Shown here one piece after another: positions 10,701 through 24,583 of a DNA stretch of 64,000 nucleotides. The DNA is from Botryllus schlosseri (lineage: Eukaryota): positions 30,566,001 through 30,630,000 of the forward strand of contig CM119372.1 of the NCBI GenBank assembly GCA_051294905.1. Reading direction: 5' to 3'. The position numbers and the translations under genes were made by a program. The first letter of the stretch is position 1, and each line of letters begins with the position of its first letter. The notes under the pieces were generated by a model that did no database searches, was not told the origin of the DNA, and was given only the letters and a program-made list of their open reading frames with translations.

Positions 10701-13700
10701 GAACAGGGGTTCCCAACCTGTGGGCCATGGCTACTCCACAATAAATAAATAAATTAAAATTTCAGAATGATACCAACACAGCAATGAGCATGGGAGTCTT
10801 GAGTTTACTTCATTTGTTTTACTTCTAGATTTCTTAATATTAATATTTTGAAATTTGCACAATGGCTACCTATGCTAAAAGAAGAATGATGACGGTTATC
10901 CAAAGTTTGCGTTCACATATCTACATGACAAAGGAGTGTGCAAACCACACTATGTTTTATGTTCAACAGTTCTGACAAATAAGTCAATAAAACCAGGAAA
11001 GCTGAAGGTTGAGAATATAGGGGAACATTAATTTTTCTACATTTCAAAAGTTTGGGGGGGGCACTGTGTAAAACAAGCTGTGCATTAGAAGTAGAAATCT
11101 GATTGGTAATTGGACATAAAATTTTAAGTACTGTTTCAAGTCTCGGGAGATTACAAAACAAATTGCAGTTGTTTAACATATTCAGACATCATACGAAATG
11201 AATTCTGGATTCGGATGTCAACGCACCAGATTCTGCACACACATACACACTGTGAAAAACAACAGAACATGGGTGGGACATATTTGCACATAGGTGAGCT
11301 TACCCTTAGCTTGTGTGATATCAACAAAAACACCGAGTCCTTGGGCCTGTCGGCGACACACTGTTCGGTAATCGCAAACAACCTTTCCACGGGCCCGTCG
11401 TACGCTTCCGTGCTGACCAATTTCTCGATGAAGGTGACAATTTCGTGAGTAGCCGTTTGCAAGGATGTCAAAACCGAAGATTGAACTTTCTTCGAAACGT
11501 TCTCGTCCGCAATTTCCAACAGCGAAGTGGCAATGTCAAGGACGTGATCCCAGGTAGCGGCCTGATAAACAGACAGAGGTGGTCACTGGTCAGTAACAGA
11601 TTGTGCCTGCATTATGAGAGTACCCAAGTCAGAGTTACCTACATGCATTACTGATTAGAATGGTTACAATATTAAATAACTACCACTGCTGCTTTAGCTT
11701 CTGATGAAAAACTACCAATATTTACACTACTTTGGCTACTGTATGGCTATTGTGAAGTAGAAAATAGTTTGTGCGACTTTTGTGTGTCAATTTACCATAT
11801 CAGACGGCGGAAATAGCCCTGGTATCGTGTTGGAGGTTATACATCCCTACAAAAGTGCAACGTGCCATATCTGAAGCGAAAAATATACAAGGAAAAGCAG
11901 TACTTTTGCCATACTAGCAGCGGCGACAATTGCAAGTAACTATCCTGATATGACGCTATCATCACTAATGGTTTGAATTCTTATCTTCATTCACTGGTTT
12001 CAATTCACGGTTCATATCAGCATAAAACAAACACAAAACTCCAGATATAGGCTTCGCCCAAAACCAACAAAGTTGCCAAGTTGAAAAACTTGCCTGCAAT
12101 TCATGCCCGTATTTTCTGACCAGTCTCTGTATCGTAAGCGCCACTTCGAAGGCGAGTTCCAAATTTTTAGTGCGCAAAGCTCGATGGAAAGCCGGCAGCA
12201 CGGATTGAGGCGTTCGCTTCAGAGTCTTTACCCGGACGGAACCCCAAAGCCCCATCCCGACGTAGAAAACGGCGCTTCTGAGAAGTGGCCAGTCCGATAA
12301 GAATCTGGGATGCTGTAAATAGGTATGTTAAAAATGTTCGGCAAAACTAACATAATGACTAAGATATATTGAAAATCTAACTAGATCTCCAAGGAATCCT
12401 GATTTTTAGCATTTTAATTTGCCTATGCGATATGGCGAATAGGCCCCCCTCTATGTTCCGCGTCCACACCTGACCGCACATTGACCACAGGTGGCAATTA
12501 GTGGCCGCTAGCCCATGGATCCTATTTTGTTATGAAAGCAGAGAAAAACTGCTGGAAAGACTTCAAAAAAGGCAAACTTTCTAAATATCACCCATTGCCT
12601 GGAAAGAATGACCATAAATGTTACATATTCCTTAGGCCTACCTATCCAAGAACACAACTGTACAATATTTTCAGTCCTCGAAGAAGAACATCAAGGTCTT
12701 TTAGATCAATATTCCGCAATTCCATCAATTTCATCAAAAATAGACTGAACACAGCATACTTGCAGTAGCGAGCACATGATTGCGATGCAGCTATGTCCCA
12801 AATGCGTTCCCAACAACTTTCTCATGAGTTTCCAGCTCTGATCGCAAAACTTCTTTGTGTTGGAAGTATGGCAGAGCATGATTGTGACAGCATTCAGGGA
12901 ACCATGTGGTAACGAACTGTAGCAAATAACGGCGTCGACAACCTAAAATACAAATCAGATTACGCGCATGCCTGTCGACTATTCTTCAAGGAAGCGTCAT
13001 ATACAGACTTTAGATCAGAAAACAATGGAATGGCACAAACCTGCAACCCCAGTTCTTTTTCCTGCTCGTCGCACCGCGATTTACAAAGGTCGCAAACATA
13101 CTTCAACATCATCACAATGGCATCCTGATCCAGATAGGACGAATTGAATTTGATGATATTGATTAGCAACGACAAAAGAGTTTGATCTCCCTTCATGATG
13201 GACAGCCAGTTGACGAGACAAGGACCGAGGTCTTGTTCGAATAGTTCGGCGTCTTTGCCGTTGTCTGTTAGCGCTTCGAAGGTTTTGACAAGTTCAGGCA
13301 GGTCCTCGGGTACATCGTGTTCTTGAAGGGCTTGGAAAAATACAGCGCGCATAATTCCAAGGTGACGATACTGGCCCTGTGACGATATGGAACAAAAATT
13401 AGCATGGATTAAGAGAGCGAATCGTATAAAAATAGTAACTTACTAAAAAAACAAGCCATCACAAATCACGTGCGCTAAGCCCTAATCACTGTCTTATTGA
13501 GCCCTGGACTCCTTTCGAATAAAGCTCAAAGCGCAACGTCTCGATAATTTTTTTCAGGAGTGGACCCAACCAATAATTTTGCACAATCACACTTTTGTTT
13601 GTAAATATCAACACGCTTTTCGAGCAATATTGTTTTCATAATATGATTCAAACTTGATGAAAAACAAAATGTTACATTTGAAGATCACTAGTAAATTTAC

Positions 13701-14872
13701 TTTAGGCAAATGCAGGAACGTTTCCTGAAATGGCAATGATACAAATTTGGAACAAAGATTGGGCCCATCTTTTTCGGGTGAAATGCGGAAACGAGTGACG
13801 CCGCTACTCTAAAATATGTAATTATGTAGGTCTTATATTCTCAGAGTACTCAGTCTCCAAGGAACCCCTAGTTGGGAATCACTGCACCAGATTAACATTA
13901 GTGACATTTCCACCACCCTCGTCTATATCTAGTAGCGAGAAGTGGTCAGTAACGAAGAACTTCTAGTTTTTACCAGACACTCAAGTGGATGTTTTAATGC
14001 TACTTACACCTGAACCGTTTCTATAGGTAAAACAAGTTCCTTTCTACTAGTTGGTTTTTGTAAAGTATACTGTGGTTTTCTCATAAGTTTGCATCACTTT
14101 TACGGCTGACTTTAGCAAGTAATTTTAGCACGCTGCTTTCACAATTGCAGGGTGCAACTTAGTGACCGACGGAAATTGACTATTGACATTACATTAAGGA
14201 GCTATCTTCGAAGATATATTCAGTTCATCAGTTGCTATGATACAGAGGATGTTTCATGCGGTTCTCATGACAATTTCAAATTTTTCAAATTCGATTTTAG
14301 TCAGTCACAAAGACGCACACCGCAATTTTTACCTGCTAAAATCACCCAACCCCTTGATAAAATCTACTTTTTGAAACTACGAAATCTATATCTTGAGTAA
14401 TTTTCATACCTTTCATTTTGTACTTCCACTTCGATTAGTTTTGACATTTAGAAAGTGTTAAATTTACTTCTCATCTAGGTATTAGTATTAACATTGACTA
14501 ATTAAAGAGAAGAGAAATGCCAGATTCGATAAACTTCCACAGGAAGACACTAACCTGTATAATGCAACGCACGAATTGCAACTCGAGCACCCGCAATTCC
14601 CTCGCTGTCTCAGGCTGCAAAAGGTCCTTGGTCTCAAGCCACAGCCGTTTCACAACAGAATCGTCCAAGATTTCGCTCTCCACCACTTTAATCGCCTCCT
14701 GAATTTTTGCGACCCGCGTTTCGGCGGGCTGCGACGCCGAAATATCCAACCAAAACTCATCGCAAATAACGTCTTTGACCGCGGAAACCGGAACAGGTTT
14801 CGGCGATGTCGGCTTGCTTAAACTCAGCAGGTTCTTAAATTTGTCTCGGAAACTCTCCTTGCTCTCCGTCAT
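1727..14872 (-). CDS. TSC2: Tuberin (TSC complex subunit 2), N-terminal ~12 coding exons; gene continues beyond the left edge
   Basis: Phase-consistent exon chain read by hand: 14555-14872, 13041-13376, 12760-12942, 12094-12312 (GC donor), 11304-11561, 10151-10300, 9119(or 9149)-9296, 8967-9057, 6372-6555, 5806-5872 (tentative), 3269-3911, 1727-2206. Motifs match tuberin as recalled: FRDKFKNLL, DLLQPE, GQYRHLGIMRAVFF, LLGTHLGHS, AVFYVGMGLWG, EQYKSVFAVALHYTNPSKF, CIDMMAR, PKRSP, TWVVGNKLITVTTS. Exons left of 1727 not resolved. Confidence 0.95.
2669..2945. mobile_element. hAT MITE, older copy
   Basis: aagtggttct...agaaccgctg termini; flanks ctttgcag/ctttaaag (6/8). Confidence 0.55.
4555..5757. 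mobile_element. hAT (Buster-type) non-autonomous element in a TSC2 intron
   Basis: CAGTGGTT...AACCACTG termini; TSD gcctagac/acctagac (7/8). Confidence 0.8.
6897..7527. mobile_element. Penelope-like element 3' end (GIY-YIG C-terminus plus terminal repeat) arranged as a 252-bp inverted repeat in a TSC2 intron
   Basis: Arms 6897-7148 and 7261-7512 are reverse complements (about 13 mismatches by eye). Plus-strand frame SAIGRHLDKNATCAKNYRDERFSILGRGRAHFHLSAL..TYIKIHRPLWCQQEFLV resembles the end of Penelope GIY-YIG endonucleases; hammerhead motif at the right end. Confidence 0.75.
7492..7527 (+). ncRNA. Minimal type I hammerhead ribozyme variant (C3 to U)
   Basis: GCCC-UUGAAGA-G(UGUCAGCU)C-GAA-AAGCUU-C-GGGU: same architecture with a different palindromic helix III (AAGCUU). 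Confidence 0.65.
8850..8886 (-). mobile_element. SINE fragment of the same family in a TSC2 intron
   Basis: Reverse complement tgtgggtttgagtcctggccgggtcaggccaaagact matches the B-box/ccgggtcagaccaaagac segment. Confidence 0.5.
9535..9569 (-). ncRNA. Degenerate hammerhead motif in a copy of the ~200-bp repeat (9481-9682), with an inverted partial copy at ~9690-9770
   Basis: Minus strand gctgacgataaccc-TTAACAA-gtgtcagc-GAAA-atat-TC-gtgtt; core mutated; flanks align with 47179-47385. Confidence 0.5.
10704..11010 (+). mobile_element. hAT-Buster transposon 5' remnant with transposase N-terminal zinc-finger fragment
   Basis: CAGGGGTTCCCAACC terminus at 10704; frame at ~10879-11007 reads KKNDDGYPKFAFT...KPHYVLCSTVLTNKSIKPGKLK, resembling the Buster/Charlie N-terminus (Y..FGF...P.C.LC...L.N.S.KP.KL). 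Right end not located. Confidence 0.65.
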
Positions 14873-14873
14873 T

Positions 14874-15203
14874 TTAATTCCAGTACGTTCTTGGCTTCTC
14901 CAACTCTTCTGCTATATGTTCGAAAAATTTCTTACGATACAGTGGACTGGCCGTGTCCAAGAAGGGATAAATCTCTTCGTAACACTTCCCCTCTAAGTTC
15001 GGCACGTTCGCATTGGGCGTCTCCGACACCTGTTTCTCAACGGTGTACCCAGATACGGTCAGGCGTAAATGGTACGTGACCTCTTCCAGGGTAGTCACCT
15101 TCAAGCGATGCTTGTCGTTTGGGTCGATAGCAACCTCTTTCACCAATGACTTGAGTTCCGAAACTAGACAACTTAATTCGTCTTCGAATGAGTAATCATC
15201 CAT
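14874..15203 (-). CDS. GSKIP: GSK3-beta interaction protein (DUF727 family), single exon, 109 aa
   Basis: ATG at 15203 (the ORF-track start at 15215 is TTG). C-terminal YEEIYPFLDTASPLYRKKFFEHIAEEL resembles GSKIP [27 protein letters not shown]; central VTTLEEVTYHLRLTVSGY resembles VETKERNRYCLELTEAGL. Acceptor ttttaaacag at 15231. Confidence 0.85.
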   Translation of the reverse strand: MDDYSFEDELSCLVSELKSLVKEVAIDPNDKHRLKVTTLEEVTYHLRLTVSGYTVEKQVSETPNANVPNLEGKCYEEIYPFLDTASPLYRKKFFEHIAEELEKPRTYWN

Positions 15204-16944
15204 CAGTAACGACAAACGTGTTCATACATCCTGTTTAAAAGTGCTAAAAAACACAGAAAATGCACAGGGTGTATGAAAATATAGCTTTACTAAAATTTAT
15301 GTACACGAGTTTTTGATGAACGAAAATGAATTCGGAAATAAACTGGGTGCGATTGTAATATATGAGAAAAAAGAGGGATAAAATATGATGGGCTTGATGT
15401 GGAAATATTACGACAGGTGTGCGAATAAAGGAATGCATGCAATGTTGTGTAGGAAAACAGTGTGGCGCACAGAATCTGATTTTAGTACTGGTTCTCGAAA
15501 ACAGGCATAGAATAGATTGAAGCGATTTGATTTGAGAACTTGTGTTGATCCCTCTGTAGTAAGGTATCATAATTAATTGCATACAACACAAACTTTGTAC
15601 AGCTCTAGGAAAGACACAAGACTACGGAAATTGTGTAAATATTATGTGAATTTTCAAGCACTTGCTACAATGGCCCAACTGCATTGACTGTAAGACCCGA
15701 CAATATTATCATAGTATACTAGCTGTCAAAAGGGCTAGTTCAACATAATTTTCTGGACAATAAACATGTGTGAATCCGTGTAAAATTGAGCTGTTGCACT
15801 CTATTTTAGTAGGCCTAGTAGACATAGGTACGCAGCGTCAAACAATGAATAAGAACTCAAGTGCCTGTACTCGATTAAGTTCAGATGTACATTCCGATAA
15901 TCGGATAACGATGCAGTCGCGAAATGAGCATTGACTGTGAGCGGTAAATATTGAATTAAATTCAGCTTGACAATTGTACCGATGAAGATGGAGAACTAGT
16001 AGAAATTGATCCACTTATTGCATCAATTCTCCGTTTATAGCTATAGAACTAACCCATCCGCAGATCCTGGCCTGACACATGAACTATACATATAAGAACT
16101 AAAAAAAGCTTGATGTACAGGTATCGGTTTCCTCGACGTAAGCAAGGGAAAGCGTCAGACTAACAGTGAGTAGAATTGGCAGAAAACAAAATTATAGGAT
16201 TCGCAAGGAACATTGCGTAATTTACGGATATCCAAAAATTTTCAAGACGCATCCTTTTCCAAATACCAAAGACTATATTCCCGACATCGTGCAACAAAGT
16301 AAACACAGGTGGCCACTGTGGACAGAGTAGTCATTGTCGCTACTGAAGAAGAAGCAGAAATAACCGCGTTCATTCCTGTGCAAGTGCAGGGGCAGGTAAA
16401 ATAAAGGTGGTGTATCTAGTCACTGTTGACACTCTATCAAGTATTCCGGGCCTAGGCTTGTCTGAAAACTGAGAAGTAGAGGAAGAATTAATATGGACTC
16501 TGGATTTAATACTGTAAGAAGGCAAACCCAATTTGAGTACTCAGAAAATGAAGAGGTAAACCGTTACTGAACAGTGAGCACGTCTGATTATGAATCAATA
16601 TTTTGTACTGATAGTACTATGACTAGGGCTGGGCACAATGATTCGAGTACTCAAGTCTGATTCGAAAATAAATTCTAACGACTCGAATCGAGAGAGATAG
16701 TGTTTCCAAGTACTGAGATCATACGCTCCCTGACGTTAAGAGTTAATTACCACAAAGCGCAATGAAATAGGCATGTTCCAAAATCACCGAATTATGTGAT
16801 GTGAAACTGGCATTATTGTTTGTGGCAACGTACAAGGTACGTGTTAAACTATTGACGTCTTTTATACTGTTGTGACATCACGAGTGATACTTGACTCTGT
16901 TACTCCGGAAATATATCTGTGAGTGCGACGTGCTTGAATAACGT

Positions 16945-18816
16945 TCAGTCTTTAAACAACCTATTCACTTCCGTAGAGTCGTTATCCCGCCTAGGCTTTG
17001 TGGGCGGTGGGAGCTGGGCTATAATTTTCTGAGCGTACTCAGTACGATGAATGCCCGCGTTTCTCAAAGCGTTTTCGACACGCAAACGCACGTCCTTGTC
17101 GATTTGCGCTTGCGAATAACCGTGAACGCTGTACAGCGGAGCTTGTATCGTAACATCATCGCCAGCGCCAATTCCGGCCCGGGCCTTGCTCGCGACAGTG
17201 TCCGAAACCATTCGCGACACATCGGATTCAGCAGTTACCGCGACGGTTAGACGTAGGTTGTCCAAACGCTGCGCCGCCTCCAACCGCTGTTCGGTTTTAA
17301 TACGTTCTTTCTCCGCTAGAATCTCGCTTTTCTCTCTCAACTTCTCAGACCGAAACTTGACCCGTTCTTGATTGATTTCTTTCTGACTTTCCATTTGAAG
17401 TCTCAAGTATTCCAGACGCCGTTCCTTCTCCTGGTCCAGCTTGAATTCCTCTTGACGCCTTTTTCTTTTGTACCTATTCAACTCCCCTTTTATCTTTCTC
17501 CTCCTCTCGTTTTCCAGCCACTGATGCTTCTCTTCGTCTTCCAATTCTCTCATTCGCTTTCTCTCCTCCAATTCCTTTTCCAGAGCCATCATCTCCTGCT
17601 GTTGCGATCGTAACTGCGTCACTTTTGCATGCAGTGCATCGCATATCTTCCTTTGCCGTTCCCTGTCTTTCGCAATCAGATTTGCTTCTACGTAACTGTT
17701 ATGCGCTTCCGCAAACGCAAACATGGCCGTCGTGAACAAGTTGCTAAAATCACGTTTGTAGTTCGAAACCAGCACTTCGCTTTGCTTTTTCGAGTACTTT
17801 CTCTTAAAAAAGTGGCTCTCGAGCTTGAAAAGGTCACTTTTCGTCAAATGCGGCTGCAACCTCGCCAACATGTCTATGATCAACGAGTGTACGTTGTTTT
17901 GCAAGTGCTTCGGAACGTGAGAATGATACAAATCATGGACAACACCGAAAAGCCAACAGTCCATGTTCCTTTGCGACGTGTACAATTCGGCGGCTTCGTA
18001 TTTTAGTTCTTCCTCGCGAAGACGTTTCGTGTAGTTTTCATGCAACTCGATAAACTGTCGGAACACCATATGCTTTAATTCATCATCGGGACAATCTGAG
18101 AATACAACGTCAATAGGTATCGCTTTCCCCATAGGCGCGATCTTCGGCAGATCATTGCCATCGAGAAACTCGCATTGCGCCAGGTCGTCACTTAAAATCT
18201 GCGTCTGCCGAGTCAGCCAATCTGTCACCGGCTTGCATTGCGATTTCACAGAGTTGACCTCTTCTAAAATATTGGCGCCTTCATCGGTTAAACTCTGTCG
18301 CAGTATATCGTTGTTTCTGACGCCGTTGTGCAAACGTATTTTGAGATCTGCGATCAACTGCTGGACTGGAACGATCACGGTTTGAGAGAATTCTCTCAAA
18401 TCAGATTCGAGCTCGAGCCGGTATGAATCTAAGTCGTCTGCGTACCCGTCAAGACCTAGAGAAGTCACAGTGTCTAAAAAATTGGCGAGATTCGATTGAT
18501 GCGCGAATTCGGCTTCGCGTAATTGGTCTCTCAACTCCTTGTACGATTCTTTCCAAACAGGATAATGCTGACGTATCCAATTTCTCTCTTTCCCGAATCT
18601 GGCACGCTTCTGAAGCTCGCCGAGACGAACGTTGGACGTTTGAGCGACGTTGCGAAATTTCGCAGCGGCCTGTTTCGCCTCGTCGTAATTAAATCGTCGG
18701 TACCGATCGCTCGTCAGTCCAGTCATCATTCTGGTCACAAGATGTCTCTGTTCCGTCTCGTCATTATTCTGAGTGCGGTGCGAGAGTATGAAGTCTCGGA
18801 GATTACGTCCACTCAT
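16945..18816 (-). CDS. CCDC148: Coiled-coil domain-containing protein 148, intronless
   Basis: Long ORF with ATG at 18816 (track start at 18825 is TTG). C-terminal VAVTAESDVSRMVSDTVASKAR and DVRLRVENALRNAGIHRTEYAQKI...PTKPRRDNDST match the CCDC148 C-terminus as recalled. Confidence 0.9.
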   Translation of the reverse strand: MSGRNLRDFILSHRTQNNDETEQRHLVTRMMTGLTSDRYRRFNYDEAKQAAAKFRNVAQTSNVRLGELQKRARFGKERNWIRQHYPVWKESYKELRDQLREAEFAHQSNLANFLDTVTSLGLDGYADDLDSYRLELESDLREFSQTVIVPVQQLIADLKIRLHNGVRNNDILRQSLTDEGANILEEVNSVKSQCKPVTDWLTRQTQILSDDLAQCEFLDGNDLPKIAPMGKAIPIDVVFSDCPDDELKHMVFRQFIELHENYTKRLREEELKYEAAELYTSQRNMDCWLFGVVHDLYHSHVPKHLQNNVHSLIIDMLARLQPHLTKSDLFKLESHFFKRKYSKKQSEVLVSNYKRDFSNLFTTAMFAFAEAHNSYVEANLIAKDRERQRKICDALHAKVTQLRSQQQEMMALEKELEERKRMRELEDEEKHQWLENERRRKIKGELNRYKRKRRQEEFKLDQEKERRLEYLRLQMESQKEINQERVKFRSEKLREKSEILAEKERIKTEQRLEAAQRLDNLRLTVAVTAESDVSRMVSDTVASKARAGIGAGDDVTIQAPLYSVHGYSQAQIDKDVRLRVENALRNAGIHRTEYAQKIIAQLPPPTKPRRDNDSTEVNRLFKD

Positions 18817-19799
18817 TTTGTTCAATAAAGGCTAGGATTAGCACAAGCCTAATAATCTGGAAAATAGAAACCAGTGTATTTCAAATGCAAACAATGCTGG
18901 TCTTTGCTATCACTAATGTGGGGCAGTCGTAGATGACATTAGGCAGATGGGTAGTCTACAGAAACAGAAAATGTCAACAAAGATCGCATTCATGAAATAG
19001 TCCATCAGAGATTTATATCAAATAGCCTACTAGGATTCGTGGAAGCGTGAAAATGTCAGGCAGCACATATCAAGGAGGGGCTGTCGCAACCTTGCACATG
19101 ACGAAACTTGGATGTTACTTCGTAATCGTAGGAAGAAGACTTGAAAAATCAAGATGAAATAATAAAAACTACCGGCATAATCCAAGAAAAATATACCATA
19201 ATAACTAGTGCCGGCCAAGATTCCGATTCGAAATTGAGTTCAGGCTTTGACGAGAGTCGAGTATCGCGAATTGTTACTTCGTAAGAGTATGGATGATCTC
19301 CTAGACATAGACCGTATTCTCACGGCAAAAATTTACATCAAAAATTTGTATCATACTCTAATAGTTACAGTGCACAAACAAGGCCTAGCTTGGCGGTTCC
19401 CATTCATTGACATTATCCAAACATAATACTGGTACAATCTCAACAAAAACAAGGGATAATGTGGACATACAGGTAATAAAGAGGCTGGCAATGACAAATA
19501 TCAAAAGGGGAGCTATACACTGAGATATGAAAGTGTCCCACACTCATGTACTGTACAATACATGCTACCATAACAGGTTGACACTCAATGAGGGAAGCTT
19601 CATATCATCGCAAAGGTGTCAATTTAGTGTCAACTGATGTTTTACTACACCCTTCATTAGACGATGCACAAATGTCAGCATTTCTGTTTATGTAACATGA
19701 AATAGCACCCCAGTCTGAAATTCACACACAACCGTAATAAAACTTAATCTTAAACATCAGACTTTGAAAATTTTGACAAAAATGGCGAACTTGGTTTCG

Positions 19800-20681
19800 T
19801 TACGATGATACGCCATCTGCTAGTGGGCACAATTCGGGAATGACAAATCGGTAAGTCAATCTTACGTAGGATCCAGAAAATCCTTCGCATTGACTTTGAC
19901 ATAAAAACACTTGCCTCATAGTGACGTGGTCGGACAACGACACTCCCGAGTTGCAAATTTGAACATCAACATCGATGTCAGGCTTGTGACGAAACAATTG
20001 CAGTCTCAGTAATTTCTTTACATGCATAGCCGTAGCCCGCGATGGGCATCGGACATAGTTTTTTACGATTGGATAAAAATTAACACCACGGTACGTACAA
20101 CTATCATGGAGAAATTTGCTTTCATGCAAAAATATTTCATCCATTTCGAATAGCAGGATAATTTTGAGATCATGCTCAAATCGGTGAGCTGTCTTATAAT
20201 TAGGAATTGACGAGACGTCTGCTGCAGGAATGTCAACATCACTGACATCACGGGTAACTTTCTGGCTTGTGTATTTCAACGGAGTTCCGATTTTAAGCAA
20301 ATGACTTCCGCTCTGGGTAAAATCCATCCCCTTGGACGTATAGAACTTGGCCTCAGCTTCCTGCTCGCTTTTGAACAAATTCGGGACCAGCTTATACACT
20401 ACGTCTTGCATCACCCGATCTGATCGGAGATTATTGAGCGGGTAGGTCTCATGCATCTTTTGACCGCACTGCGGACACGATTGCCTCGTCTGAAAGTATT
20501 TCACGATGCAACTCTTGCAGAACGTGTGGGAACACTCTGTGATCGTGGTGGCGTCGATGAAATAACCTGCGCACAGGCCGCAAACGATGTGAGGGTTTAG
20601 CTCGCGGATTTTGACGATCAGATCCGGTTCTTTCGGTGGTTCCATACACGCTGATTCCATTTTCTGGTCACACGGCTGCAT
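19800..20681 (-). CDS. PCGF1: Polycomb group RING finger protein, PCGF1-like, intronless, 293 aa
   Basis: C3HC4 RING (CGLC...ECSHTFCKSC...CPQC) in KIRELNPHIVCGLCAGYFIDATTITEC context, followed by DRVMQDVVYKLVP; C-terminal RAWUL-like segment (YVRCPSRATAMHVKKLL). Closest to PCGF1 by recalled sequence. Confidence 0.85.
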   Translation of the reverse strand: MQPCDQKMESACMEPPKEPDLIVKIRELNPHIVCGLCAGYFIDATTITECSHTFCKSCIVKYFQTRQSCPQCGQKMHETYPLNNLRSDRVMQDVVYKLVPNLFKSEQEAEAKFYTSKGMDFTQSGSHLLKIGTPLKYTSQKVTRDVSDVDIPAADVSSIPNYKTAHRFEHDLKIILLFEMDEIFLHESKFLHDSCTYRGVNFYPIVKNYVRCPSRATAMHVKKLLRLQLFRHKPDIDVDVQICNSGVSLSDHVTMRQVFLCQSQCEGFSGSYVRLTYRFVIPELCPLADGVSS

Positions 20682-22077: not shown

Positions 22078-24583
22078 TCAATACCCACAGCAAAGGTTCA
22101 TATTAAAAACATTGCTTAAAGTTGGCTGTCTATCCTTCTCTGACACATGCAGTGTGTCAAGATCAACGGACTTAACTCCGATGTCCGGAAAGTTGTTGAA
22201 AATGTAGAGCTTGTTGTTTGTGATGTGGGTCTTCATACGGTCACAGCTGATTTTGAGATTCGCAATCAATTGCCATTGCTCAGTGATGTGGTTCAAGAAC
22301 TCAACATCTTCTGCCCCACCACCTAATGCGTAGAGAGTGTTTTCATACCAGAGACTTTTCCCCCAGGTCCGCAATCTCGTTAATGATGGATACGGAGAGT
22401 ATGAAAGACCAACTGCAGCCAGTAGCTCGAGCTTTCGCACTTGCCTCGAGATCTTGGGATTACCCCCATATCGCGGATCACTTTCAGCTCCACCCATGAC
22501 ATAAAGATCTGTCGGAGAAGTTGCAATAAAAAAACCCATGCTCGGATGAGGTACAGTTATAGTTGATACAAGTGACGCTGTCAGGCTATCGGTATTGAAT
22601 ATCACAGTATCAGTGCGGGATACCACAATAACCAATCGTTGAAAACAAACGCAGACATTATAACCCCACATATTAGGATTGGAATACAACTTCTTCCACT
22701 CACTCCCATCAAAGCTCCACAAAGTTTGGCCATCCCATATGTATACCGTACCTTGATGCATTGTAATGGAACATTTATCCCAATCAGACGTTCTTCCAGG
22801 AAACTTGGCTAACCTTGAACATCTCTCCGATGCGAGGTGGTATTGATAAACAATCCCCGTCCGATAGTTCATAGATACAATTCCACTCAGTTCATTGGTT
22901 CCATCCAAATTCTTGACTGGATTCCGTATATTTACGAGAACATCCTGAACATGTTGCAAACACTCTACTGAATCTCTAACCAAATCCTCACAGCAGACAC
23001 TCCCCCTCAAGAAGTCATTGGACATGCAGTGAAGATCCACCATCTTGAAGAGGGCATTGAAATTTTCTTTTCTTTCAAGACGTTCCTTTGTCCACGACAG
23101 AATCCCAAACCATTTCTGCTCTTCTAATGGACTGCAGCCTTCCTTTAAAAATCCTAGGCAATCCACGAGACCAGTATAGTCTAGAGATAGAAAATCAGCG
23201 GTTTTTCTAAATTCTTCAAAATGTTTTTCAAGGAAATTCTGGAGGCCCAAATTCAATTTCTGCTTTTTATACAGACGGACTAGAGACATGACCTCAGCAC
23301 AGCTTTGCATATCAATATTTTCGGCCAGAAACTCCACACAAAGCTGAGACAATTTGAGCAATTGCATCATTTCTGCAGCATTCAGAAGCCCTCGAGCTAT
23401 ATCCATCGTAATCCACACAGATCCAGTATAGATGAAATCAACAATCTGTTTCACCACATCGGGATCCATGGCAGAAAAGTCTACAATTTGACTCTGAGAT
23501 TCCTTAGTATCATTTTGGAACATTGCTCTAAAATAGTCAGTGCTTGCCACTAGTATCATTTTATGTGCCTTCACTTCAAAATCTCTACACTTTATTGTGA
23601 CATCACAAAGGTTTTCATTAGCTTTCAGTTTCAGTATTGAAGCCCACAGTTCGGTATTGTGATCTTCCACTATTTTCTGGACACGCTTCACATTCACATC
23701 TTCAAGTGAAACTCTGTTCAATGCAATAACGAAAGTCAGTAGAAGTCAAGTGCTGGCTAATCCAGGACACACTTAAATTGCACACACAGATGTATATTCT
23801 ATATTGATAATCGATAGGTCGAGTTCAGCCGGAATCAATATATATCATTAGCGCATTCAGATCAGATGATGTTTTTTAGTCAGCGAGCTGAGCGCAAGAT
23901 GGGTGACCAGGTGCAGCAGGAGGCAAAGGCGCACGTGGTTTGTGGGCACTATGGACGCTGTAGCGACCATAATGAATATGTTTTGGAATGACTATGGACA
24001 CAGCTGTTGAATAAATAAAACCCAAGTTGAAAAATTTCCGAGGGTGACTAGCGATCACACAACGGGACGCCATAAACCCGCGAAACCCGTAAAATCAGCT
24101 ACAATAACTGAAAGAAATTGAGGAAACTATTGTACAAGTAAAAAATGTGCTGGTATAGTTTGCCTAGACAACTTTTCAAGTGACTACGGGTTATATTCAA
24201 ATTCAAACAAATGCAAAACCCCCAAAACAGACCGCAAAATCAAGAGGTCTATACGCTGGCTTGGTATATCCAGGTAGGCCTATTGTGTTTTTCTTACATT
24301 GATTTTTGTGCAGACTGTTAATTTAGATTCTAGATATCATAAAAATGACCGAATTAAACCTGAAACAACACTCGAAAAAAATTTGAGAATCTCGAAACCA
24401 ATAAACTTTGGCTTCAATGCCTGCAAGACATCGGTGAAATCATAGCAAAGCAGGGCATGTTCCGCAGGGCATGACTGATATATTATAAGGTTGTATAGTG
24501 TAGGGAGTCGCCAGATATTTGATATTAAATGAATACAATGCTTACCTGGGTCTCTTGGATGATGGTCCTCCAGTCAAATCCAT
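22078..24583 (-). CDS. BTB-BACK-kelch (kelch-like) protein, copy 1, intact, two coding exons
   Basis: Exon 1 24546-24583 (MDLTGGPSSKRP, CAG|GTAAGC donor, phase 2) joins exon 2 22078-23713 (ttgaacag|A GTT TCA). BTB motifs LCDVTIKC, KAHKMILVASTDYFRAMF, IVDFIYTG; BACK region; degenerate kelch repeats (LYVMGG, LYALGGG); ends LCCGY. Confidence 0.9.

What the first reader, a model, noticed from the sequence alone, without database searches (positions are those of the whole stretch)
14860..14930. GSKIP stop codon is one nucleotide from the TSC2 start codon (TAA-A-ATG)
Seen: minus strand ...TGG AAT TAA A ATG ACG GAG...; both ORFs look complete (GSKIP C-terminus and tuberin N-terminus match their families). 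There is no room for a GSKIP 3' UTR, a poly(A) site or a TSC2 promoter. Candidate acceptors inside the GSKIP CDS (tttttcgaacatatag|cag|aag at 14912/14909) have no ATG between them and the TSC2 ATG. Established: tunicates resolve operons by SL trans-splicing, and GSK3 phosphorylates TSC2 while GSKIP binds GSK3-beta. Inference: the two are made from one transcription unit, by trans-splicing or alternative splicing into the GSKIP coding sequence, or by termination-reinitiation. That would couple a GSK3 regulator to its substrate, possibly with mutually exclusive output.
Basis: partly seen in the sequence, partly recalled or inferred. Interest (0 to 1): 0.78.

Follow-up and report, generated by a model that had tools for sequence, protein, structure and literature searches.

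The report
GSKIP and TSC2 share one transcript
In this sea-squirt genome the small GSK3-binding gene GSKIP ends one base before the start codon of the growth regulator TSC2; the two lie on one spliced RNA and the pairing is kept across sea squirts, which makes it an extreme form of the known tunicate operon, but how TSC2 gets translated is not yet shown.

Summary
On the minus strand a complete one-exon GSKIP ORF (15203-14874) stops at TAA, followed by one A and the ATG of TSC2 exon 1 (14872). A spliced RNA contig from another individual carries the same junction with no indel.

The abutment is conserved. In eight other tunicate taxa GSKIP lies directly upstream of TSC2. In seven of them the stop-to-ATG spacing could be read: -8, -4, +1, +3, +12, +50 and at most 110 nt.

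Spliced RNA contigs in three species, from four runs, hold GSKIP followed by intron-free TSC2. One transcription unit is therefore well supported (about 0.85).

How TSC2 is expressed is not resolved, because my only read-laying run gave no raw reads on the junction. Two mechanisms remain:
- Spliced-leader trans-splicing at weak AG sites inside the last 75 nt of GSKIP, which would make the two mRNAs mutually exclusive (about 0.4).
- Translation of TSC2 from the dicistronic mRNA by leaky scanning or reinitiation (about 0.35). Here the GSKIP ATG has a pyrimidine at -3 in 5 of 5 species and the TSC2 ATG a purine in 5 of 5.

The published Ciona rule, poly(A) added at the acceptor AG, cannot yield a complete GSKIP mRNA in the window.

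This is a new variant of a known kind. The scan earlier noted a similar tight pair (ZSWIM7-SNX19) in this genome.

The parts
14874..15203 (-). GSKIP coding sequence: a single exon of 109 codons plus the TAA stop at 14876-14874.
   Evidence: Pfam GSKIP_dom E 1.6e-13, profile positions 1-104 of 105. Only copy in the genome. Matches human GSKIP structure 1SGO. Polymorphisms against the RNA contig are 5 synonymous and 2 non-synonymous.
14870..14876 (-). The junction TAA-A-ATG: GSKIP stop, one spacer base, TSC2 start.
   Evidence: Read directly. No gap in the independent RNA contig.
14873..14878 (-). ATTAAA hexamer overlapping the GSKIP stop. It is a possible poly(A) signal for a short GSKIP mRNA that would end inside the first TSC2 codons.
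   Evidence: Pattern scan. Use as a signal is not shown. The relative L016 has AATAAA 5 nt before its TSC2 ATG.
14554..14872 (-). TSC2 exon 1 (319 nt). The ATG at 14872 is the only ATG in the exon.
   Evidence: Exon end fixed by the RNA contig joint 14554 to 13375 with GT..AG ends. The N-terminus is 91% and 62% identical to relatives that start at the same Met.
13039..13375 (-). TSC2 exon 2.
   Evidence: RNA contig joints. DUF3384 match.
12760..12940 (-). TSC2 exon 3. Further TSC2 exons continue down to about 1726 and beyond the window start.
   Evidence: RNA contig. tblastn of a 1614-aa relative maps residues 1-1052 to 14872-1726.
15244..15262 (-). Strong splice-acceptor-like site (pyrimidine tract plus TAG), with the exon starting at 15243, 40 nt before the GSKIP ATG. 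It is the likely 5' end of the GSKIP-TSC2 RNA.
   Evidence: Pyrimidine fraction 0.78, within the range of the real TSC2 acceptors (0.56-0.83). An equivalent site lies 48-57 nt before the ATG in L015, L016 and L017. The mRNA contig L019 begins at the corresponding place, 40 nt before its ATG.
14912..14949 (-). Candidate internal acceptors inside the GSKIP coding sequence. Their exons would start 74 nt (CAG 14949-14947), 58 nt (AAG 14933-14931) and 39 nt (TAG 14914-14912) before the TSC2 ATG, with no ATG in between.
   Evidence: Sequence scan only; use is not shown. The pyrimidine tract is dictated by the conserved IYxFLD protein motif.
16945..18825 (-). CCDC148-like single-exon ORF on the same strand, 1.7 kb upstream of GSKIP. 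It may be the first gene of the unit.
   Evidence: 47% identity (E 1e-117) and 34% identity (E 4e-48) to the two CCDC148 ORFs that precede GSKIP in L024.
15292..15579 (-). Transcribed stretch, unique in the genome, just upstream of the GSKIP acceptor. [quoted passage not shown]
   Evidence: Single-cell run X14 gives depth 19 and 7.7 here against less than 1 on GSKIP, in the same orientation as the few GSKIP and TSC2 reads. The stretch has one copy in the genome.

Best explanation
GSKIP and TSC2 form a conserved ascidian operon-type transcription unit, probably led by a CCDC148-like gene, in which the spacer has shrunk to nothing.

Shown:
- The two ORFs abut.
- A spliced RNA holds both.
- The arrangement is conserved across ascidians.

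Inferred:
- The RNA gets its 5' end at the strong acceptor 40 nt before the GSKIP ATG.
- Any message that encodes full GSKIP must run past the TSC2 AUG, and any separate TSC2 message must begin inside the GSKIP coding sequence. One primary transcript therefore cannot give both.

The mechanism I commit to (about 0.4 on its own): inefficient spliced-leader trans-splicing at one or more weak AGs in the last 75 nt or so of the GSKIP coding sequence gives a monocistronic TSC2 mRNA. Transcripts that escape this splicing give GSKIP; they either stay dicistronic or are polyadenylated just after the ATTAAA at the junction. Output of the two proteins would then be mutually exclusive per transcript.

Confidence in the top-level claim, one conserved co-transcribed unit, is about 0.85.
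For: Junction and ORFs.

Spliced RNA holding both ORFs:
- Contig 15198-14554 joined to 13375-13039 and 12940-12760, with no gap.
- Species B: 5380-nt and 5750-nt RNA contigs from two runs, with GSKIP followed 12 nt later by an uninterrupted 1614-aa TSC2 ORF.
- Species C: TAA-G-ATG followed by a 439-aa uninterrupted TSC2 ORF.

Spacing in relatives: -4 and +3, +50 and -8, at most 110.

CCDC148 to GSKIP to TSC2 order in L024 and L025.

A strong acceptor precedes GSKIP in every genomic sequence, and the mRNA contig's 5' end falls at that place.

Ascidian operons are known to lack intercistronic DNA, to be resolved by the spliced leader, and were proposed to be mutually exclusive per transcript (PMC1488885 sections 14 and 17; PMC2760879).

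An AG lies 0-2 nt before the TSC2 ATG in L015, L016 and L017.

The GSKIP ORF is under coding constraint: 5 synonymous against 2 non-synonymous changes, with the domain kept in 11 taxa.
Against: - No read or contig shows a spliced leader on TSC2 or a poly(A) tail on GSKIP. The raw runs gave zero depth on the junction.
- This species' leader sequence was not identified. The Ciona leader is not enriched in the genome.
- The window has no AG between the stop and the ATG. The internal candidate acceptors are weak, and their pyrimidine tract is forced by the protein sequence.
- Two candidate AGs are polymorphic.
- Trans-splicing gives no reason for the spacer to stay within -8 to +12 nt in six taxa, nor for the GSKIP AUG to sit in a weak context in 5 of 5 species.
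- Assembled contigs can merge two overlapping mRNAs, so they do not prove a mature dicistronic mRNA.
Confidence: 0.4

Rival explanations
1. True bicistronic mRNA. The only mature TSC2 message is the GSKIP-TSC2 RNA. Ribosomes reach the TSC2 AUG by leaking past the weak GSKIP AUG and the few weak or very short out-of-frame AUGs, by reinitiating right after the GSKIP stop, or by both.
For: - Dicistronic spliced contigs occur in three species and four runs. In species B they start only 36-41 nt before the GSKIP ATG.
- The stop and start overlap or nearly touch in six taxa, including ATGA and ATGAGTGA overlaps.
- The GSKIP ATG has a pyrimidine at -3 in 5 of 5 species, and the TSC2 ATG a purine at -3 in 5 of 5.
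- Of the 14 upstream ATGs not forced by the Met-Asp codons, 12 have a weak context. The strong-context ATGs open ORFs of at most 10 codons. No upstream ORF runs over the TSC2 ATG.
- No consistent acceptor lies next to the ATG across species.
Against: - Reinitiation after an ORF of about 105 codons is normally inefficient in eukaryotes (general knowledge).
- Spacers of 50 nt, and perhaps 110 nt, in two taxa do not fit strict stop-start coupling.
- Downstream genes of ascidian operons are, as far as studied, trans-spliced (PMC1488885).
- Dense synonymous polymorphism in the last 16 GSKIP codons argues against a conserved reinitiation-promoting RNA element there.
- A spliced dicistronic mRNA whose first ORF ends before many exon junctions would be expected to be prone to nonsense-mediated decay (inference).
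- Contigs may merge overlapping mRNAs.
Confidence: 0.35
2. Independent internal promoter. TSC2 is transcribed from start sites inside or just upstream of the GSKIP coding sequence, and the two-gene contigs reflect read-through or merged overlapping transcripts.
For: Contigs cannot separate overlapping transcripts (tool caveat). Read-through transcripts that link neighbouring genes without a leader have been reported in a colonial ascidian (PMC3691228).
Against: - Such a promoter would have to sit in protein-coding DNA in at least eight lineages while the stop stays glued to the ATG.
- In species B both independent contigs start at the GSKIP leader, not inside GSKIP.
- In run X1 only one contig covers 14572-15147; there is no second 5'-end contig.
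Confidence: 0.1
3. Ciona-rule operon. The leader is added at an AG right at the TSC2 ATG, and poly(A) is added to that same G to finish the GSKIP mRNA, so both UTRs are close to zero length.
For: The rule is documented in 19 Ciona operons (PMC1488885 section 14). It fits species C (TAAG|ATG) and the L016 species (AATAAATAG|AAATG) exactly.
Against: - In the window the spacer is A, so there is no AG between the stop and the ATG.
- In species B the 12-nt spacer holds no AG.
- In L017 and in the 2047-nt contig the ATG lies before the GSKIP stop, so a GSKIP mRNA ending at that AG would lack a stop codon.
Confidence: 0.05

Closest known systems
Ciona-type SL-resolved operons without intercistronic DNA (Satou et al. 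2006, 2008; PMC1488885, PMC2760879)
   Same: Same-strand genes are directly abutted in an ascidian. Unresolved two-gene RNAs are detectable. Mutually exclusive processing per transcript was already proposed for these operons. Upstream cistrons mostly lack a canonical poly(A) signal.
   Different: In Ciona the abutment is between mRNA ends, and each gene keeps its own UTRs. Here the coding sequences themselves abut (1 nt) or overlap (-4, -8) in relatives. The rule that poly(A) is added at the acceptor AG therefore cannot give a complete GSKIP mRNA in the window. No leader on TSC2 has been shown.
C. elegans SL1-type operons, with no intercistronic spacer
   Same: The poly(A) site and the trans-splice site coincide, so making one mRNA excludes the other (as cited in PMC1488885).
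   Different: This is a nematode system. Canonical AATAAA is present, and the UTRs are still separate from the coding sequences.
Eukaryotic and viral bicistronic mRNAs read by leaky scanning or termination-reinitiation, for example calicivirus and influenza B stop-start overlaps or MOCS2 (from my own knowledge)
   Same: Stop and start overlap or lie within a few bases (ATGA-type overlap in a relative). The upstream AUG is weak and the downstream AUG strong.
   Different: No reinitiation-promoting element was found. The upstream ORF is a conserved 100-110-codon protein gene. Translation of TSC2 from the two-gene RNA is not shown.
ZSWIM7-SNX19 tight pair in the same genome (earlier scan note s1-240508)
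   Same: Two unrelated genes lie 13 nt apart on one spliced RNA, the pairing is conserved among sea squirts, and the route to the second gene's message is unshown.
   Different: It is a different gene pair. I did not re-test it.

Membership tests
Ciona-type SL-resolved operon | Neighbouring same-strand genes less than 100 bp apart | tested here: met
   1 nt between the coding sequences. Relatives range from -8 to +50 nt.
Ciona-type SL-resolved operon | RNA that spans both cistrons | tested here: met
   Spliced contigs in run X1, L018 and L019 and L015. Caveat: contigs may merge overlapping mRNAs.
Ciona-type SL-resolved operon | Downstream mRNA carries the spliced leader at an acceptor on the boundary | tested here: inconclusive
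   Zero raw-read depth at the junction, so no loose ends were seen. The leader of this species was not identified, and the Ciona leader is not enriched.
Ciona-type SL-resolved operon | Upstream mRNA ends at the G of the acceptor AG and is complete | tested here: not met
   The window has no AG between the stop and the ATG. Any upstream AG would cut off the stop codon. The feature is met in relatives L015 and L016 only.
Ciona-type SL-resolved operon | Separate monocistronic mRNAs for each gene | not testable with these tools
   This needs reads or long cDNAs.
Bicistronic mRNA translated by leaky scanning or reinitiation | Stop and start overlapping or within a few nt, and conserved | tested here: met
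   -8, -4, +1, +1, +3 and +12 nt in six taxa. Two taxa have longer spacers: +50 and at most 110 nt.
Bicistronic mRNA translated by leaky scanning or reinitiation | Weak context at upstream AUGs and strong context at the downstream AUG | tested here: met
   GSKIP has a pyrimidine at -3 in 5 of 5 species and TSC2 a purine at -3 in 5 of 5. 12 of 14 non-forced upstream AUGs are weak.
Bicistronic mRNA translated by leaky scanning or reinitiation | Mature capped, polyadenylated mRNA with both ORFs, and initiation at the second AUG | not testable with these tools
   Needs long-read cDNA, ribosome profiling or reporters.
GSKIP (Pfam PF05303) | Full GSKIP domain, including the C-terminal SPxYRxxF...KL helix | tested here: met
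   The invariant residues S86, Y89, R90 and F93 are present.
Tuberin / TSC2 | N-terminal DUF3384, tuberin and Rap-GAP domains | tested here: met
   DUF3384 exons lie in the window. The window aligns to residues 1-1052 of a 1614-aa relative that carries all three domains. The Rap-GAP part lies outside the window.

The most novel reading that the evidence does not exclude
Ascidians keep a truly bicistronic cellular mRNA. GSKIP and TSC2 would both be translated from one spliced, polyadenylated message. The TSC2 AUG would be reached by leaky scanning past a conserved weak GSKIP AUG, by reinitiation at a stop-start overlap, or by both, so that translational control sets the ratio of a GSK3-binding protein to a GSK3 substrate in the mTOR pathway.
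Probability: 0.3. Interest if true: 0.8.

Novelty: new variant of a known kind. Interest (0 to 1): 0.6.

Why it matters
Ascidian operons are known to lack spacer DNA between mRNAs, and how such operons are resolved is still an open question (PMC1488885). This pair removes even the UTRs. The coding sequences touch or overlap in several lineages, so the published rule of poly(A) addition at the acceptor AG cannot apply. That forces one of two outcomes: mutually exclusive processing inside a coding sequence, or translation of two proteins from one chordate mRNA. Either outcome is directly testable on a conserved, essential gene (TSC2). The pairing of a GSK3-binding protein with a GSK3 substrate is suggestive, but it may be a coincidence of operon formation.

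Tried and rejected
- **Raw RNA reads.** Two bulk runs and one single-cell run laid on 12700-17000 gave no depth on GSKIP or TSC2.
- **Spliced leader.** The Ciona leader, alone, with GT, or with the Sm-site motif, is not enriched in this genome. This species' leader stayed unidentified.
- **Exact look-ups.** The window's own GSKIP is not on record. A look-up of species B's TSC2 found only the same two-gene contig, with no leader-headed TSC2 contig. Two relatives' contigs could not be fetched as DNA.
- **Rfam.** No match on 12700-17000.
- **Literature.** No paper links GSKIP and TSC2 in an operon or in tunicates. The botryllid leader paper is not held.
- **Fusion by frameshift or read-through: rejected.** The frame offset between the ORFs differs among species (0, +1, +2), and species B has a second in-frame stop.
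- **Misassembly: rejected.** An independent RNA contig shows no gap.
- **Repeat origin of the upstream transcribed stretch: rejected.** It has a single copy in the genome.
- **ATTAAA/AATAAA at the junction.** Present in 2 of 5 species, but I judged it too easily produced by an A-rich context to count as evidence.
- **Conserved pyrimidine tract plus AG inside GSKIP.** It follows from the conserved IYxFLDxxS protein motif and cannot be counted as evidence for an acceptor.
Full report
**1. Observation**

The minus strand reads TGG AAT TAA A ATG ACG GAG. The TAA is at 14876-14874, the single spacer A at 14873 and the ATG at 14872-14870.

- The upstream ORF (ATG 15203, 109 codons) is a full GSKIP domain: Pfam PF05303, E 1.6e-13, profile positions 1-104 of 105. 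It aligns to the solved human GSKIP structure 1SGO. It is the only such match in the 495.5-Mb genome.
- The downstream ORF is the first exon of TSC2. It gives a weak DUF3384 hit, and stronger DUF3384 exons follow at 13364-11292. A 1614-aa TSC2 from a relative maps by tblastn with residues 1-1052 on 14872-1726, so the gene runs off the window.
- Exon 1 has no second ATG. The conserved N-terminal motif starts right after this Met in all relatives. The ATG at 14872 is therefore the TSC2 start.

**2. The junction is real**

Run X1, from another study, contains one 5069-nt contig on the minus strand. Its bases 1-645 lie on 15198-14554, bases 646-982 on 13375-13039 and bases 983-1163 on 12940-12760.

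- The skipped parts have GT..AG ends, so this is spliced RNA.
- It differs from the reference by 12 substitutions and no gap over 15198-14554. The 1-nt spacer therefore exists in a second individual.
- The listed differences are 5 synonymous and 2 non-synonymous in GSKIP, and 24 synonymous and 0 non-synonymous in TSC2. Both ORFs behave as coding sequence.

**3. Conservation**

GSKIP evolves fast. A search of 1.8 billion representative proteins found only 15 hits. One of them is Ciona intestinalis XP_018671854.1, annotated 'uncharacterized'. With earlier scan notes that call this genome a sea squirt, this places the window in an ascidian.

Wherever the homologue's contig could be inspected, TSC2 follows directly on the same strand:

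| Source | Stop-to-ATG spacing | Notes |
|---|---|---|
| 2047-nt contig | -4 | ATGA overlap |
| 1349-nt contig | +3 | |
| Species B (L018/L019) | +12 | |
| Species C (L015) | +1 | TAA-G-ATG |
| L016 (L024/L025: same or a closely related species, GSKIPs at least 90% identical) | +50 | AATAAA and TAG just before the ATG |
| L017 | -8 | ATGAGTGA overlap |
| A further contig | at most 110 | start not verified |

- In L024 a CCDC148-like gene precedes GSKIP. The window's 626-aa ORF at 18825-16945 is its homologue, 47% identical with E 1e-117. The three-gene order is therefore also conserved.
- The GSKIP C-terminal helix (SPxYRxxF...KL) is conserved to within about 8 codons of the stop. Only the last few residues vary.

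**4. One transcription unit**

- Besides the X1 contig, species B gives RNA contigs of 5380 and 5750 nt from two independent runs. They begin 41 and 36 nt before the GSKIP ATG and hold GSKIP, a 12-nt spacer and an uninterrupted 1614-aa TSC2 ORF with DUF3384, Tuberin and Rap_GAP.
- Species C gives GSKIP followed by 439 uninterrupted TSC2 codons.
- Every genomic sequence has a strong pyrimidine tract plus TAG 40-57 nt before the GSKIP ATG (window: exon start 15243). The 5' end of species B's mRNA contig falls at that place.
- In single-cell run X14, reads in the sense orientation pile up at 15292-15579, a stretch unique in the genome, just before that acceptor. [quoted passage not shown] That is inference.
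- Caveat: assembled contigs can join two mRNAs that overlap by more than a k-mer. They prove RNA across the junction, not a mature two-gene mRNA.

**5. What the anatomy forces**

- That rule fits species C (TAAG|ATG) and L016 (TAG|AAATG).
- It fails for the window, which has no AG between the stop and the ATG.
- It fails for species B, whose spacer has no AG.
- It fails for the two overlap cases, where a GSKIP mRNA ending at that AG would have no stop codon.

So in the window a message that encodes full GSKIP must contain the TSC2 AUG. A separate TSC2 message must start inside the GSKIP coding sequence.

**6. Two live mechanisms**

(a) Spliced-leader trans-splicing at weak AGs in the last 75 nt of GSKIP.
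- The candidate exon starts lie 74, 58 and 39 nt before the ATG, with no ATG in between.
- This is the default for ascidian downstream cistrons. It would make the two mRNAs mutually exclusive per transcript, as Satou et al. already proposed for spacer-less operons.
- Against it: the candidates are weak, their pyrimidine tract is dictated by the IYxFLD motif, and two candidate AGs (-36 and -22) are lost in the X1 individual. It also does not explain why the spacer stays so short.

(b) Translation from the two-gene mRNA.
- The GSKIP ATG has a pyrimidine at -3 in 5 of 5 species, and the TSC2 ATG a purine in 5 of 5.
- 12 of the 14 upstream ATGs not forced by the Met-Asp codons are in weak context.
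- The strong-context ATGs open ORFs of at most 10 codons, and no upstream ORF overlaps the TSC2 ATG.
- Against it: reinitiation after about 105 codons is usually poor, two taxa have longer spacers, and no reinitiation element is evident.

I put (a) at about 0.4, (b) at about 0.35, an internal promoter at about 0.1 and the strict Ciona rule at about 0.05. The two main routes are not exclusive.

**7. What could not be done**

- The species' leader was not identified.
- No paper mentions this gene pair.

**8. Verdict**

The mechanism and the functional coupling to GSK3 signalling remain inferences. This is a new variant of the known ascidian operon. The scan had already noted a similar tight pair, ZSWIM7-SNX19, in this genome, so it may belong to a small class.

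Noticed in passing
window 15196-15229 (-): If the 5' end is at 15243, the GSKIP leader holds two short upstream ORFs. The first starts at ATG 15229, has 8 codons, and its TGA stop overlaps the GSKIP ATG (TGATG). The second starts at ATG 15225, has 9 codons, and ends at 15196, past the GSKIP ATG. The second would carry ribosomes past the GSKIP start. Neither is conserved in the four relatives.
   Followed up: partly
window 16620-16665 and 13938-13971: Two short stretches draw very high RNA depth in every run (up to about 4500 in X1), at 90-95% likeness and with unrelated loose ends on both sides. This looks like a dispersed, heavily transcribed short repeat. No Rfam family matched.
   Followed up: partly
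window 16945-18825, 19800-20681, 22078-23721 (all -): Three long intron-free ORFs lie on the same strand upstream of GSKIP: CCDC148-like (626 aa), a RING plus RAWUL PCGF-like protein (293 aa), and a BTB-BACK kelch-like protein (547 aa). This is a run of single-exon genes in an otherwise intron-rich region (TSC2 has many introns).
   Followed up: partly
Ciona intestinalis XP_018671854.1 (P0013): The Ciona protein annotated 'uncharacterized protein LOC108950472' is a GSKIP homologue. Its model has an extra 17-residue N-terminal extension before the conserved MD start.
   Followed up: no
L015:1-824: The RNA contig of species C runs unspliced through the acceptor in front of GSKIP and for 824 nt further upstream, including the end of another ORF (3-116). 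Unprocessed polycistronic precursor, or an upstream gene's 3' UTR, is therefore abundant enough to be assembled.
   Followed up: no
window 14895-14922: Four of the seven GSKIP polymorphisms between the reference and the X1 individual fall in the last 16 codons, and all four are synonymous. There are none in codons 43-93.
   Followed up: partly
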